From: Octopus sinensis
Lineage: Eukaryota
Direction: 5' to 3'
Length of the DNA: 13,840 nt
NCBI RefSeq assembly: GCF_006345805.1
Contig: NW_021826034.1
Location: 1 to 13,840, forward strand
Part shown: piece by piece, positions 3,265 through 13,840 of the stretch
How the letters are laid out: each line of letters begins with the position of its first letter
Numbering within the stretch: position 1 is the stretch's first letter
Translations under genes and position numbers: made by a program
The notes under the pieces: model-generated
The model's input: the letters and a program-made list of their open reading frames with translations, nothing else
Databases searched by the model: none
What the model was told of the DNA's origin: nothing

Positions 3265-3860
3265 GCCTCACTACTCGTTACCCCTCGTCACCTCTCGTCA
3301 CTTCTCACAGCATCACTCTTCGTCATTCGTCACCATTCGTTCATTATCACTCATCATCCTTCGTAACAGCTTGGCACCAATCGTCATTGCTCGTCACTAT
3401 TCATCACCACTCATCACCATTCGTCCCCATTCATTTACGACTCATCACTACTCGTCACCAGACGTCATAACTCGTCCACTTGTCACCCCTCGTCACAACT
3501 CTTCACCATTTGTCTCTAGTATTCGCCATTTGTCATCACCCATCACCACATATGACCATTTGTCATCACTCGTCACCAGCTGTCACCATTCATCAACAAT
3601 CGTCACTACTCATCGGCATTCAATACTCTTTCTCACCACACATCACCCCTCGTTACCGTTCATAAATGCTCGTCACCACTCGTCACCACTCGTCACCACT
3701 CGTCACCACTCGTCACCGCTCGTCACTACTCGTCACCATTCGTCACCGATCATCACCATTCGTCATTGATCATTACCACTCATCTGTATTCGTTACCATT
3801 CGTCACTATTTGTCACCACTCATCATTCCTCATTACTCGTCATTCTTTATTATCGTCATT
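3265..3860. repeat. Degenerate 10-bp minisatellite, unit CGTCACCACT
   Basis: Purest at 3671-3740 (cgtcaccact x4, cgtcaccgct, cgtcactact, cgtcaccatt). The 30-nt translational period LVTTRHHSSP appears in three frames of the ORF track. A further decayed patch lies at ~4210-4285. Confidence 0.9.
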
Positions 3861-4469: not shown

Positions 4470-5469
4470 TACGCATACGGATGTACATACTCAGATAGAG
4501 ACAGGCAAACACATACGCATGCGCGCTGAAACGTGTGTGCGAGCATAAATGTACATATAGGAACACATGTCTAGATGTGCATGTACAAGCATGCGTACAC
4601 TCACAGACACATACAGATCCAGCTGCACGTATATACCTACGCATATACGTATGCATACGCAAGCATACACTCGCAGACACATGCAGATCCAACTGCACAT
4701 ATATACCTACATATATAGATATGCATACGCAAGCATACACTCGCAGACACATGCAGATCCAACTGCACATATATACCTACATATATAGATATGCATACGC
4801 AAGCATACACTCGCAGACACATGCAGATCCAAATGTACAAATATATATATATATACGTGCACATATTCATACATATGCAGACACATACAGGACTCAGACG
4901 CACGAGTATATCACACACCTGCAAAAACATATGCATCGGCATTTTAGCACGTATACGAACACACGTCTGGAAAGAAGTGCACGTGTATGCGCACACATGC
5001 GCAGATGAATATGGACCTAAATGAACTTAAACCTCCCCACTCCCGCTTCACACGCGCAAACATATGCACGCATACACAAACACTTGCACCAGCATATGCA
5101 CATATATACGAAGACATACATGCGTGTGCATGCGTATGCATGCGCACACTTGCAGACATACACATGCACTAAATCACACGCGTACGTACACACGCGTACA
5201 CACGGCGCATATTTTATAATATGCGTATTTACGTACGCTTACATATGATTGTGTACACTGCGTGTGAAATACACACGTTGGCATACATAGATATGAATGC
5301 ACAGACACACACACACCCAAATATACACAGATGTACACGTACACATGTATGTATAAACCACATGCATACACACAGAGAGAAACAATGACATAAGCACACA
5401 CATACATACATGCAAACATAATTTTAAACACAAATGCACGCATTGCACACACACACACACACACACACA

Positions 5470-6104: not shown

Positions 6105-6284
6105 AGCTTGCTTCTCAACCACATGGTTCCGGGTTCAGTCCCACTGCGTAGCACCTTGGGCGAATGTCTTCTACTATAAGCCTCGGGCCGACCAAAGCCT
6201 TGTGAGTGGATTTGGTAGACGGAAACTGAAAAAAAAAGCCCGTTGTGTGTATATATATATATATACAACATATATATGTATGTA

Positions 6285-6330
<46 letters not shown>

Positions 6331-6517
6331 GGCCCCAATCATCGCTTGACAACCAGTTGTATTTGCGTTTCCGTAACCTAGCGGTTCGGCAAGAAGAGAG
6401 TGATAGAATAAATACTAAGGTTTCCTGGTGGCGATCTCTTCGACTAAAACCTTTCAAGGCGGTGCTCCAAAATGGCAGCAGTCAAATGACTGAAACAAGT
6501 AAAAGAATAAATGAATA
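6105..6517 (+). mobile_element. SINE family A variant copy, lacking the extreme 5' end (A box)
   Basis: Starts at AGCTTGCTT..ACATGGTTCCGGGTTCAGTCCC (B box) and includes the internal (TA)/(TG)n, a variant 3' region with CGACTAAAACCTTTCAAGGCGG, the hairpin at 6479-6492 and the tail GTAAAAGAATAAATGAATA. Confidence 0.9.
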
Positions 6518-7107: not shown

Positions 7108-7545
7108 TACTCTTACTCTTTTACTCTTTTATTTGTTTCAATCATTTGACTGCGACCATGCTGGAGCACCGCCTTTAGTCGAGCAAATCGACCCCAGGAC
7201 TTATCATTTGGAAGCCTAGTGCTTATTCTATCGGTCTCTTTTGCCGAACCGCTAATTCACAGACACGTAAACACACCACCATCTGTTGTCAAGCGATGCT
7301 GGGGGACAAACACAGACGCACAAACATATACACACACATACATATATATATACATATATACGACGAGCTTCTTTCAGTTTCCGTCTACCAAATCTACTCA
7401 CAAGGCTTTGGTCGGCCCGAGGCTATAGTAGAAGATACTTGCCCAAAGTGCCACGCCGTGGGACTGAACCCGGAACCATGTGGTTGTTAAGCAAGCTACT
7501 TAGTCCACAGCCACTCCTCCGCCTACTTACCACACAACCACTCCT
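7108..7545 (-). mobile_element. Full-length SINE family A with duplicated 5' head fragment
   Basis: Collinear with 194-632 and ending at ..CCACTCCTCCGCCT (7524), followed by a second ACTTACCACACAACCACTCCT (7525-7545). (TA)n lies on both sides. Confidence 0.95.
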
Positions 7546-7660: not shown

Positions 7661-7767
7661 ATACCACACACACATATTTGTATATTCGAATTGATACAAA
7701 CGTATACCAACATGCTTACATAGCTATATACAGTAACATAAGAGATATGATCACTAAGTATCCGGAC

Positions 7768-8092
7768 TTCTTTGTAAGCCTAGTATTTATTTTATCGGTC
7801 TCTTTTGCCGAACCGTAAACACACCAGTATCGGTTGTCAATTATGTTGGAGGGGACAAACACAGACACACCAACATATAGGCACACACACACACACACAC
7901 ACATACATATATATATATACATATATACGACGGGCTTCTTTTAGTTTCCGTCTACCAAATCCACTCACAAGGTTTTGGTCGGCCCGAGGTTATAGTAGTA
8001 AACACTTGCCCAAGGTGCCACGCAGTGGGACTGAACCCAGAACCATGTGGTTGGTAAGCATGCTACTTGTCACATACCCACTCCTACGGCCT
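7768..8092 (-). mobile_element. SINE family A lacking its 3' ~80 bp, nested in the mariner element
   Basis: Head, B box, CORE-like block and internal microsatellite are collinear with the other copies. The hairpin and tail are missing, and a 16-bp internal deletion lies at 7815/7816. Confidence 0.9.
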
Positions 8093-8157
8093 TGAGCAGG
8101 GATCGCCAAGCTTTTGGCAAAACTGATGCAGATTCTTTGCTCAACTTTCTCTGTTAT
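8093..8157 (-). pseudogene. Mariner-type transposase N-terminal fragment (pseudogene)
   Basis: The minus strand reads ATA(ex-ATG?) T E K V E Q R I C I, then after a 1-nt deletion F C Q K L G D P C S. This fits the 'EQRxCIKFC.KLG' start of mariner transposase HTH domains, ~165 bp inside the TIR. Confidence 0.75.
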
Positions 8158-8419
8158 AGTTAATGCAACAAGCATACGCTACACGTGTTCCTTCCAAGCA
8201 CTGCTGTAAGCAGCAGAAGTGAGCTAGAACGTTAAAACTAACTGCGCATGCAAAAGAGAGTTCAAAGTCAATTTGTGTCAAGCGGCTTTACTCTGCGTAC
8301 TTTAGCTTCGTTAGTATAGCAAAAGTCCGGATACTTATTGATCAGACTACATATCCATTTTGTTATATCTGTACAGACATTCATATTACACGTACATAAG
8401 TAGCCACGCACACCTACAT

Positions 8420-11875: not shown

Positions 11876-11876
11876 T

Positions 11877-12131
11877 GAATTTGGTAGACGGATACTGAAA
11901 GAAGCCCATCGTATATATGTATATGTATATATATGTGTGTGTGTATTTGTATGGCTGTGTTTGTTCCCCCAACATCGCTTGACAACCTATGCTGGTGTGT
12001 TTACGTCCCCGTAACTTAGCGGTTCGGCAAAAGATACCGATAGAATAAGTACTAGGCTTACAAAGAATAAGTCCTGAGGTCGATTTGCTTGACTAAAGGC
12101 AGTGCTCCAGCATGGCCGCAGTAAAAGAGAG
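11877..12131 (+). mobile_element. 5'-truncated SINE family A
   Basis: Begins at GAATTTGGTAGACGG, has the internal microsatellite and the 3' region, and carries an 18-bp deletion just before the tail. Confidence 0.9.
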
Positions 12132-13116: not shown

Positions 13117-13519
13117 AGGCGCAGGAGTGGCTGTGTGGTAAGTAGCTTGCTTACCAACCACATGGTTCCGGGTTCAGTCCCACTGCGTGGCATCTTGGGC
13201 AAGTGTCTTCTGCTATAGCCTCGGGCCGACCAATGCCTTGTGAGTGGATTTGGTAGACGGAAACTGAAAGAAGCCTGTCGTATATATGTATATATATGTG
13301 TATGTATGTGTGTGTGTGTGTGTGTGTGTTTGTGTGTCTGTGTTTGTCCCCCCACCATCGCTTGACAACCGATGCTGGTGTGTTTACGTCCCCGTCACTT
13401 AGCGGTTCGGCAAAAAGAGACCGATAGAATAAGTCCCGGGGTCGATTTGCTTGACTAAAGGTGGTGCTCCAGCATGGCCGCAGTCAAATGACTGAAACAA
13501 GTAAAATAGTAAAATAGTA

Positions 13520-13739: not shown

Positions 13740-13740
<1 letters not shown>

Positions 13741-13818
<78 letters not shown>

Positions 13819-13840
13819 GTCTGTCTGTCTGTCTGTCTGT
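13741..13840. repeat. (CTAT)19(CTGT)6 compound tetranucleotide microsatellite, running to the window end
   Basis: CTAT at 13741-13816 and CTGT at 13817-13840. Confidence 0.97.

What the first reader, a model, noticed from the sequence alone, without database searches (positions are those of the whole stretch)
7741..8351. Mariner shell carrying a SINE: a composite DNA-transposon/retroposon unit
Seen: 29-bp inverted termini (23/29; inner 22 bp 21/22), each bounded by TA, enclose 611 bp made of a mariner 5' UTR, ~22 codons of transposase (TEKVEQRICI/FCQKLGDPCS) and then a family-A SINE whose body joins the opposite TIR directly. Known: mariner duplicates TA and transposases can mobilise TIR-bounded non-autonomous elements in trans. 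Inferred: a SINE inserted into the transposase ORF and a later deletion removed about 1 kb of mariner plus the SINE tail. That left a MITE-like unit that could have spread a SINE head and Pol III promoter by cut-and-paste rather than by retrotransposition. The outer TIR bases have decayed, so it may be a one-off fossil.
Basis: partly seen in the sequence, partly recalled or inferred. Interest (0 to 1): 0.72.

Follow-up and report, generated by a model that had tools for sequence, protein, structure and literature searches.

The report
Dead mariner shell enclosing a SINE
A 611-bp relic of a mariner DNA transposon keeps both end repeats but has lost its gene and instead holds a retroposed SINE; the anatomy is real, it is an ordinary transposon fossil of a known kind, and whether it ever multiplied could not be tested.

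Summary
On the minus strand, 8351-7741 reads as follows:
- TA, then a 29-bp mariner terminal inverted repeat (TIR).
- A 165-bp 5' UTR.
- 22 decayed transposase codons (ATG changed to ATA, plus a 1-bp frameshift).
- A SINE with a complete 5' end that lacks its last ~80 bp.
- The second TIR joined directly to the SINE, then TA.

Independent mariners fetched from public data share the window's N-terminus. They also carry the same TIR family at both ends, about 205-212 bp upstream of their ATG, and are ~1.3 kb long. This confirms the shell's identity, the terminus at 8351, and a loss of about 1 kb.

The SINE is missing its 3' end. Retroposition truncates 5' ends, so a deletion must have followed the insertion. 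The junction shows 2-6 bp of microhomology.

The 'spreading MITE' idea could not be tested. None of the reachable DNA or protein collections contains this SINE, so zero junction hits carry no information.

Three points favour a one-off fossil:
- SINEs occur about once per 2.3 kb in this window, so nesting is expected.
- The outer TIR bases and the Pol III A box have decayed.
- Human MER6/MER6A is already a described mariner MITE that carries a SINE.

Verdict: a new member of a known kind, of low to moderate interest.

The parts
8352..8353 (.). TA flanking the 5' TIR (putative half of the target-site duplication)
   Evidence: Read from the sequence. Relatives L001 and L002 have TA at both ends, and L003 has TA at its 3' end; its 5' end abuts the contig start. 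This is weak evidence on its own, because the flanks are AT-rich.
8323..8351 (-). 5' terminal inverted repeat of the mariner (TGTAGTCTGATCAATAAGTATCCGGACTT)
   Evidence: It is the inverted-repeat partner of 7741-7769. It aligns from its first base with the TIR CGAGGTCTGTTCAAAAAGTATCCGAC of L001, L002 and L003, which starts directly after TA.
8158..8322 (-). Mariner 5' untranslated region, 165 bp
   Evidence: It lies between the TIR and the start-codon remnant. The distance from terminus to start is 194 bp, against about 205-212 bp in L001-L003. There is no other copy in the window.
8093..8157 (-). Remnant of transposase codons 1-22 (start of the HTH_48 domain). ATG is now ATA at 8155-8157, and a 1-bp deletion lies near 8125-8127.
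   Evidence: Translation is shown. Between 14 and 17 of 21 residues are identical to about 30 database proteins, nearly all (27 of 31) beginning at their residue 2. The tblastn and blastn matches to L003 fall only here (85% identity over 48 nt).
7768..8092 (-). tRNA-type SINE with a full-length 5' end and a truncated 3' end. A-box-like site at 8070-8080 (degenerate), B box at 8027-8037, internal (TA)n/(TG)n at about 7866-7928. It also carries a 16-bp internal deletion relative to the other copies.
   Evidence: It matches five other copies in the window. The multiple alignment shows its 5' end coincides with the family's 5' end, and about 80 bp of 3' sequence is missing. Divergence from the local consensus is JC 0.10-0.13.
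7741..7769 (+). 3' terminal inverted repeat of the mariner (AGAGATATGATCACTAAGTATCCGGACTT). Its inner end overlaps the last SINE bases by 2 bp (7768-7769).
   Evidence: It shares with the other arm three differences from the relatives' TIR (A at position 10, T at position 15, an extra G). This marks the two arms as one lineage.
7739..7740 (.). TA flanking the 3' TIR
   Evidence: Read from the sequence.

Best explanation
This is one decayed copy of a DD34D mariner that inserted at a TA. A full-length SINE then retroposed into about codon 22 of its transposase gene, in the same orientation as the gene. A single later deletion of about 1.1 kb removed the SINE's last ~80 bp and about 1.0 kb of mariner. 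That deletion fused the SINE to the inner edge of the other TIR across a few bases of microhomology. The product has the form of a MITE (TIR, non-coding filling, TIR) but is most likely a single-locus, now immobile fossil.

Shown: the parts, their boundaries, and the mariner and SINE identities.
Inferred: the order of events, that only one deletion occurred, and that the unit did not amplify.
For: Mariner identity:
- The N-terminal remnant matches the family MTE[RK][VI]EQRYCIKFCQKLGD.
- The loci encoding those proteins carry TIRs homologous to both window arms, directly after TA, about 205-212 bp upstream of ATG, at both ends of ~1.3-kb elements.
- The L003 transposase is Mos1-like (E 1e-41 to PDB 3hos).
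- It contains HTH_48 and Transposase_1 and has DD34D spacing, counted on the translation.

One element rather than two:
- The arms match 21/22 in the inner part and share three lineage-specific differences from the relatives' TIR.
- No shuffle reaches this repeat.

SINE retroposition followed by deletion:
- The SINE's 5' end coincides with the family's 5' end, while about 80 bp of 3' sequence is missing.
- The naturally truncated copy at 11876-12067 lacks its 5' part instead, as target-primed reverse transcription predicts (established knowledge).
- The junction overlaps by 2 bp. It can be read as 4-6 bp of microhomology (TTTG, or GGACTT with a 3-bp loss).

Ordinary nesting:
- There are 6 SINE copies in 13.8 kb, so a 1.3-kb target expects about 0.5 insertions.

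Decay:
- The start codon is lost and the frame is shifted.
- 5 of the outer 7 TIR positions differ between the arms.
- The A-box-like site differs from the local SINE consensus at two positions.
Against: - Copy number in the source genome is unknown, so 'single-locus' rests on base rates and decay, not on a search.
- The number of deletion events cannot be read from one copy.
- The consensus TIR of this particular lineage is unknown. The outer 7 bp match the distant relatives' CGAGGTC at only 4/7 in each arm.
- TA flanks are weak evidence in AT-rich DNA.
- The probe that retrieved the relatives was padded with 16 residues recalled from memory. The window-derived 21 residues alone would not be significant against 5.8 billion proteins. 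Significance comes from the independent TIR and spacing match.
Confidence: 0.65

Rival explanations
1. The chimera is one member of an amplified MITE family. After it formed, a mariner transposase supplied in trans moved it by cut-and-paste, and it carried the SINE head with it.
For: - It has all the formal requirements of a MITE: two TIRs of one lineage, TA flanks, 611 bp and no coding capacity.
- MER6/MER6A show that mariner-plus-SINE chimeras can amplify. 8,588 copies were analysed in that study (PMC6887750).
- The divergence of the TIR arms (about 0.10-0.12 per site) is no older than that of the SINE (JC 0.10-0.13), so a move after chimera formation is not excluded.
Against: - There is no second copy in the 13.8-kb window.
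- No external data were available to search.
- Most internally deleted transposon copies never amplify (established knowledge).
- SINE nesting is expected by chance at this density.
Confidence: 0.12
2. The order of events was different. The mariner first became a short internal-deletion derivative, the SINE then retroposed into it, and a second, small deletion removed the SINE tail up to the TIR. This is the order proposed for MER6.
For: - Luchetti et al. propose deletion first and SINE second for MER6 (PMC6887750).
- Internal-deletion derivatives of mariner are common (established knowledge).
- Nothing in the locus fixes how much mariner sequence lay between the SINE tail and the TIR.
Against: - It needs two deletions where one suffices.
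- No trace of 3' subterminal mariner sequence remains between the SINE and the TIR.
Confidence: 0.15
3. The SINE was not retroposed into the mariner. It was copied in as filler DNA by template switching during abortive gap repair after an excision.
For: - There is microhomology at the SINE-TIR junction.
- Abortive gap repair with filler capture is an established route to non-autonomous DNA elements (established knowledge).
Against: The SINE's 5' boundary coincides, within about 3 bp, with the family's true 5' end. That is expected for retroposition and would be a coincidence for random template switching.
Confidence: 0.05
4. The two TIRs come from two separate mariner or MITE insertions that were brought together by chance or by deletion.
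For: - Mariner elements are reported to be numerous in cephalopod genomes (PMC8967140).
- TA flanks are uninformative here.
Against: - It requires two fragments in exactly inverted orientation.
- Each fragment would have to end at a true terminus, one of them trimmed exactly to its TIR.
- The two arms share three lineage-specific TIR differences.
- No other fragment of this mariner lies in the window.
Confidence: 0.03

Closest known systems
MER6 / MER6A (human, primate, bat and eulipotyphlan MITEs built from a Mariner-2_CPB-like shell and an Ac1-like V-SINE; Luchetti et al. 2019, PMC6887750)
   Same: Mariner termini enclose SINE-derived sequence and there is no transposase. The same concept of a SINE sequence able to ride a cut-and-paste vehicle was proposed there.
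   Different: - MER6 carries the SINE body and tail but not the tRNA-like head. This unit carries the head and body but not the tail.
- MER6 is shown to be amplified (thousands of copies). Here only one copy is known.
- The host, the mariner lineage and the SINE family are unrelated.
Internal-deletion derivatives and MITEs of mariner (for example MADE1 from Hsmar1, and deleted Mos1-type copies); named from general knowledge
   Same: - Both TIRs and the 5' subterminal region are kept.
- The catalytic domain is lost.
- The deletion breakpoint shows short microhomology.
- The flanks are TA.
   Different: More than half of the interior (325 of 553 bp) is a foreign retroposon rather than residual mariner sequence.
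Mos1-type DD34D mariner transposons (Pfam HTH_48 + Transposase_1; PDB 3hos)
   Same: The parent lineage of the shell shares these features:
- A TIR of about 29 bp.
- TA target sites.
- A 5' UTR of about 200 bp.
- An N-terminus of the form MTE.VEQR.CIKFCQKLGD.

Relatives are about 1.3 kb and match Mos1 at E 1e-41.
   Different: The window copy keeps only 22 codons and cannot encode a transposase. Its UTR has no detectable nucleotide similarity to the relatives found.
tRNA-derived SINEs that dominate octopus genomes (PMC8967140; PMC13282606)
   Same: - It has a head with Pol III box A and box B motifs.
- There are many copies per window; SINE sequence is about 13% of this window, against 11.6% of the genome reported for O. 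vulgaris.
- It has an internal microsatellite.
   Different: - The host species of the window was not established with the tools. Assigning it to an octopus rests on my recollection of the SINE and is unverified.
- This copy is truncated at the 3' end, which retroposition does not produce.

Membership tests
mariner (Tc1/mariner superfamily, DD34D) - derivative of | Terminal inverted repeats of about 28-30 bp, homologous to those of elements that encode a mariner transposase | tested here: met
   Both arms align with the TIRs of L001, L002 and L003, starting directly after TA. The arms match 21/22 in the inner part.
mariner (Tc1/mariner superfamily, DD34D) - derivative of | TA target-site duplication | tested here: met
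   TA lies at 7739-7740 and 8352-8353. The value of this evidence is low in AT-rich flanks.
mariner (Tc1/mariner superfamily, DD34D) - derivative of | Transposase with an N-terminal HTH (HTH_48) and a DD34D catalytic domain | tested here: not met
   Only codons 1-22 remain, and they are broken. The catalytic domain is absent from the window. Relatives have it. The unit is therefore a non-autonomous derivative, not a functional mariner.
MITE (miniature inverted-repeat transposable element) | Short (under about 800 bp), bounded by TIRs, flanked by a target-site duplication, non-coding | tested here: met
   611 bp with two TIRs, TA flanks and no intact ORF of transposase origin.
MITE (miniature inverted-repeat transposable element) | Multiple dispersed copies with the same internal structure at different target sites | not testable with these tools
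   There is one copy in the window. The SINE control pattern is absent from all DNA collections, and SINE-derived ORFs are absent from the protein collection. Zero junction hits are therefore uninformative.
tRNA-type SINE (the internal element) | Repeated family with an internal Pol III promoter (box A and box B) in its head | tested here: met
   Five other copies lie in the window. The box B-like site GGTTCAGTCCC is intact at 8027-8037. The box A-like site at 8070-8080 departs from the family consensus at two positions. ARAGORN and Rfam call nothing, as is usual for diverged SINE heads.
tRNA-type SINE (the internal element) | Complete 3' end or tail, as required for target-primed reverse transcription | tested here: not met
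   About 80 bp of 3' sequence present in the other copies is missing. This implies loss after insertion.
MER6-like composite (mariner shell plus SINE cargo) | Mariner termini enclosing SINE-derived sequence | tested here: met
   compared with PMC6887750.
MER6-like composite (mariner shell plus SINE cargo) | The chimera itself has amplified | not testable with these tools
   No genome of the source organism or a relative is reachable.

The most novel reading that the evidence does not exclude
The 611-bp chimera is a member, or the founder, of an amplified MITE family in its host. The family would carry a complete SINE 5' head with its Pol III promoter and would be moved by a mariner transposase. 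In that case a retroposon module has been spread by cut-and-paste and could seed new SINE source genes at new sites. This would complement MER6, which carries only the SINE body and tail.
Probability: 0.1. Interest if true: 0.55.

Novelty: new member of a known kind. Interest (0 to 1): 0.25.

Why it matters
As it stands, this is a neat, fully dissectable example of three things. It shows how non-autonomous DNA elements arise: nesting followed by a microhomology-associated internal deletion. It shows how densely this genome is packed with SINEs. It also gives a terminus-to-ATG map for an otherwise undescribed mariner lineage.

It would matter more only if the same two junctions recur at other TA sites. 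It would then be a second, independent case after MER6 of a SINE hitch-hiking on a mariner. It would also be the first such case to carry the promoter-bearing head.

Tried and rejected
**Searches that led nowhere**
- Pfam on the 28-aa frame-corrected peptide and on the 61-aa junction ORF found no family, because the queries are too short.
- ARAGORN and Rfam on the window found nothing.
- Exact look-ups found none of the window's ORFs on record. This covered the junction ORF and nine others.
- A homologue search with the 61-aa junction ORF, meant to find paralogous chimeras, returned one word-sharing candidate and nothing scoring.
- A homologue search with the consensus antisense SINE ORF, meant to reach host genome contigs, returned no candidate.
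- The TIR pattern gave 0 hits in viral contigs.
- The deletion-junction pattern gave 0 hits in metagenome contigs and genome contigs.
- The SINE control pattern also gave 0 hits in all three collections, which makes the junction nulls uninformative.
- A full-text search for the SINE and TIR sequence strings found 0 papers.
- The supplement of the O. vulgaris repeat paper is a single 6.4-kB document; I did not open or search it for sequences.
- Joining the two flanks into an 'empty site' and searching the window found no paralogous empty site.

**Ideas rejected**
- A mariner inserted into a SINE. The flanks outside the TIRs are not SINE.
- A second MITE inserted into the SINE tail. The inner end of the TIR, not the outer end, abuts the SINE.
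- A chance inverted repeat.

**Caveat**
The first homologue query had to be padded to 40 aa or more, using 16 residues I recalled for this mariner family. I therefore did not use its E-values as evidence. I relied on the window-derived residues and on the TIR and spacing match.

Full report
**1. What is in the sequence**

The window is AT-rich, microsatellite-rich eukaryotic DNA. One SINE family is present six times in 13.8 kb: 295-629, 6105-6417, 7207-7521, 7768-8088, 11876-12067 and 13120-13432. I recall this SINE as the abundant octopus type, and SINE sequence makes up about 13% of the window. That compares with 11.6% of the genome reported for Octopus vulgaris (PMC13282606). The host was not established with any tool, so this remains a lead only.

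**2. The inverted repeat**

- The repeat finder reports arms at 7748-7769 and 8323-8344, 22 nt and 95% complementary, 553 nt apart.
- This is the only non-microsatellite inverted repeat of that quality in the region.
- TA lies immediately outside both arms.
- None of 300 dinucleotide shuffles reached 21/22; the maximum was 20.

**3. The mariner shell**

Read on the minus strand from 8351, the unit has a 29-bp arm and then 165 bp without homology elsewhere in the window. After that comes ATA-ACA-GAG..., which reads ITEKVEQRIC, a 1-bp slip, and then FCQKLGDPCS.

The homologue search needs at least 40 aa. I therefore padded the 28 window-derived residues with 16 residues recalled for this kind of mariner. 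I do not use those E-values as evidence. What counts is the following.

- About 30 of the returned proteins begin MTE[RK][VI]EQRYCIKFCQKLGD. They match 14-17 of the 21 window-derived residues, nearly all (27 of 31) starting at their residue 2. The window's ATA is therefore a mutated start codon.
- I fetched the DNA around three of them: L001 and L002 from ENA ERZ25067590, and L003 from Logan SRR31412062.
- That DNA shows TA|CGAGGTCTGTTCAAAAAGTATCCGACTTTT about 205-212 bp upstream of the ATG, and the same sequence inverted at the other end.
- L002 and L003 are about 1.3 kb from TIR to TIR; L001 is about 1.9 kb.

The TIR was not part of the query. The window's arm TA|TGTAGTCTGATCAATAAGTATCCGGACTTTT nevertheless aligns with it from the first base, at a comparable distance (194 bp) from the start codon.

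- Both window arms share three differences from those relatives (A at position 10, T at position 15, an extra G). This marks them as one lineage.
- The L003 transposase hits the window by tblastn only at 8157-8093, and by blastn at 85% over 48 nt.
- The L003 transposase matches Mos1 at E 1e-41 (PDB 3hos).
- It has HTH_48 and Transposase_1.
- It shows DD34D spacing on its translation.

The shell is therefore a bona fide mariner derivative, and its terminus at 8351 is confirmed.

**4. The SINE**

Aligning the chimera's copy with the other five gives these results.

- Its 5' end, AGGCCGTAGGAGTGG at about 8092, coincides with the family's 5' end, (T)AGGCGCAGGAGTGG.
- Its 3' side stops at GGCTTACAAAGAA.
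- Full copies continue for about 80 bp more (TAAGTCCTGGGGTCGATTTGC...GAAACAAGTAAAAGAG).
- The last two SINE bases are also the first two of the TIR.
- Depending on how the junction is read, the SINE and the inner TIR share TTTG, or GGACTT with a 3-bp loss. That is 2-6 bp of microhomology.

Retroposition by target-primed reverse transcription starts at the 3' end and truncates 5' ends (established knowledge). The copy at 11876-12067 shows exactly that pattern. A SINE that is complete at its 5' end but truncated at its 3' end therefore requires a deletion after insertion.

This copy also lacks 16 bp internally. Its box A-like site differs from the family consensus at two positions, while its box B is intact.

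**5. Age**

| SINE copy | JC distance from the local consensus |
|---|---|
| Chimera's copy | 0.10-0.13 |
| Three youngest copies | 0.00-0.06 |
| Oldest copy | 0.15-0.18 |

- Relative to the relatives' TIR, and after removing the shared differences, the two arms carry about 7 private changes in 58 positions (about 0.12). The TIRs and the SINE are therefore about equally old.
- If the O. vulgaris calibration applied (JC 0.065 is about 18 My and 0.09 about 25 My; PMC13282606), this would be roughly 30 My. That estimate depends on the unverified host.

**6. Most likely history**

The sequence of events was probably: mariner insertion at TA, then full-length SINE retroposition into codon ~22, then one ~1.1-kb microhomology-associated deletion, then neutral decay. 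The deletion could have arisen by in-place end-joining or slippage, or by abortive gap repair after an excision.

Rivals:
- Deletion first, SINE second, then a second small deletion. This is the order proposed for MER6, and it needs one extra event.
- Filler capture by template switching. It is disfavoured by the exact SINE 5' end.
- Two independent TIRs. It is disfavoured by the orientation, the exact termini and the shared lineage markers.

**7. Did it spread?**

- The window's ORFs are not in the protein collection.
- The junction ORF and a consensus SINE ORF find nothing there.
- A 25-nt SINE core that is exact in 3 of the 5 window copies that retain the head is absent from metagenome, viral and prokaryote-genome contigs.
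- The zero hits for the deletion junction therefore carry no information.

The indirect evidence leans towards a one-off:
- With one SINE per 2.3 kb here, a 1.3-kb mariner expects about 0.5 SINE insertions, so nesting is unremarkable.
- Internal deletion is the usual fate of mariner copies.
- The outermost TIR bases, needed for cleavage, are the most decayed.

**8. Comparison with what is known**

Human and other mammalian MER6/MER6A are MITEs. They are built from the ends of a Mariner-2_CPB-like element and a nearly full-length Ac1-like V-SINE that lacks its tRNA head. They amplified to thousands of copies (PMC6887750).

The present unit is the same kind of object but differs in three ways. 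It has the complementary cargo (head and body, no tail). It comes from a different mariner and a different SINE. It has no demonstrated amplification.

It meets the structural definition of a MITE. The copy-number criterion is untestable here. As a mariner it fails the transposase criterion, so it is a non-autonomous derivative.

**9. Verdict**

The structure and the deletion are supported. Mobility is untested and, on priors, unlikely.
- It is a new member of a known kind.
- Interest is 0.25. It would rise to about 0.55 if identical junctions are found at other TA sites.

Noticed in passing
window 7741-7747 and 8345-8351: The mismatches between the two TIR arms are not spread evenly. Five of the six lie in the outermost 7 bp and one in the inner 22 bp (hypergeometric p about 0.001). 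Each arm keeps a different 4 of 7 bases of the relatives' CGAGGTC terminus. Possible causes are a natively imperfect TIR in this lineage, CpG decay at positions 1-2, or repair after failed cleavage. This is unresolved.
   Followed up: partly
window 7500-7545: The neighbouring SINE copy (7207-7521, minus strand) carries a partial tandem duplication of about 21-27 bp of its own 5' head (AGGAGTGGTTGTGTGGTAAGT before AGGCGGAGGAGTGGCTGTGG...). It sits directly next to a (TA)n tract.
   Followed up: no
window 7768-7865 (alignment A1, columns 425-440): The chimera's SINE lacks 16 bp (CGTCCCCGTAACTTAG) that are present in all five other copies. This is either a private deletion or a subfamily marker.
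   Followed up: no
window 11876-12067: This is a 5'-truncated SINE copy, with the head missing and the copy starting near GAATTTGGTAGACGG. It is the usual retroposition truncation and a useful contrast to the 3'-truncated copy inside the mariner.
   Followed up: partly
window 3375-3825, 4589-4936 and 13740-13838: A degenerate 10/20/30-bp minisatellite (CTCATCACCA-type, about 450 bp), a 70/140-bp tandem repeat (2.4-3.7 copies, 78-93% matches), and a (TCTA)25 array at the window's end.
   Followed up: no
L003 1-1330 (Logan SRR31412062); L002 2779-4095 and L001 2789-4669 (ENA ERZ25067590): These are relatives of the parent mariner. L003 is a 1.3-kb element whose transposase frame is interrupted by a single stop codon. 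L001 is about 1.9 kb between identical TIRs, so it probably carries an insertion. The source organisms of these samples were not identified.
   Followed up: partly
window, all six SINE copies: Each full SINE copy contains an internal (TA)n/(TG)n microsatellite of variable length between its body and its 3' part. The family therefore seeds microsatellites across the window, and many of the 'ORFs' listed are translations of these tracts.
   Followed up: no
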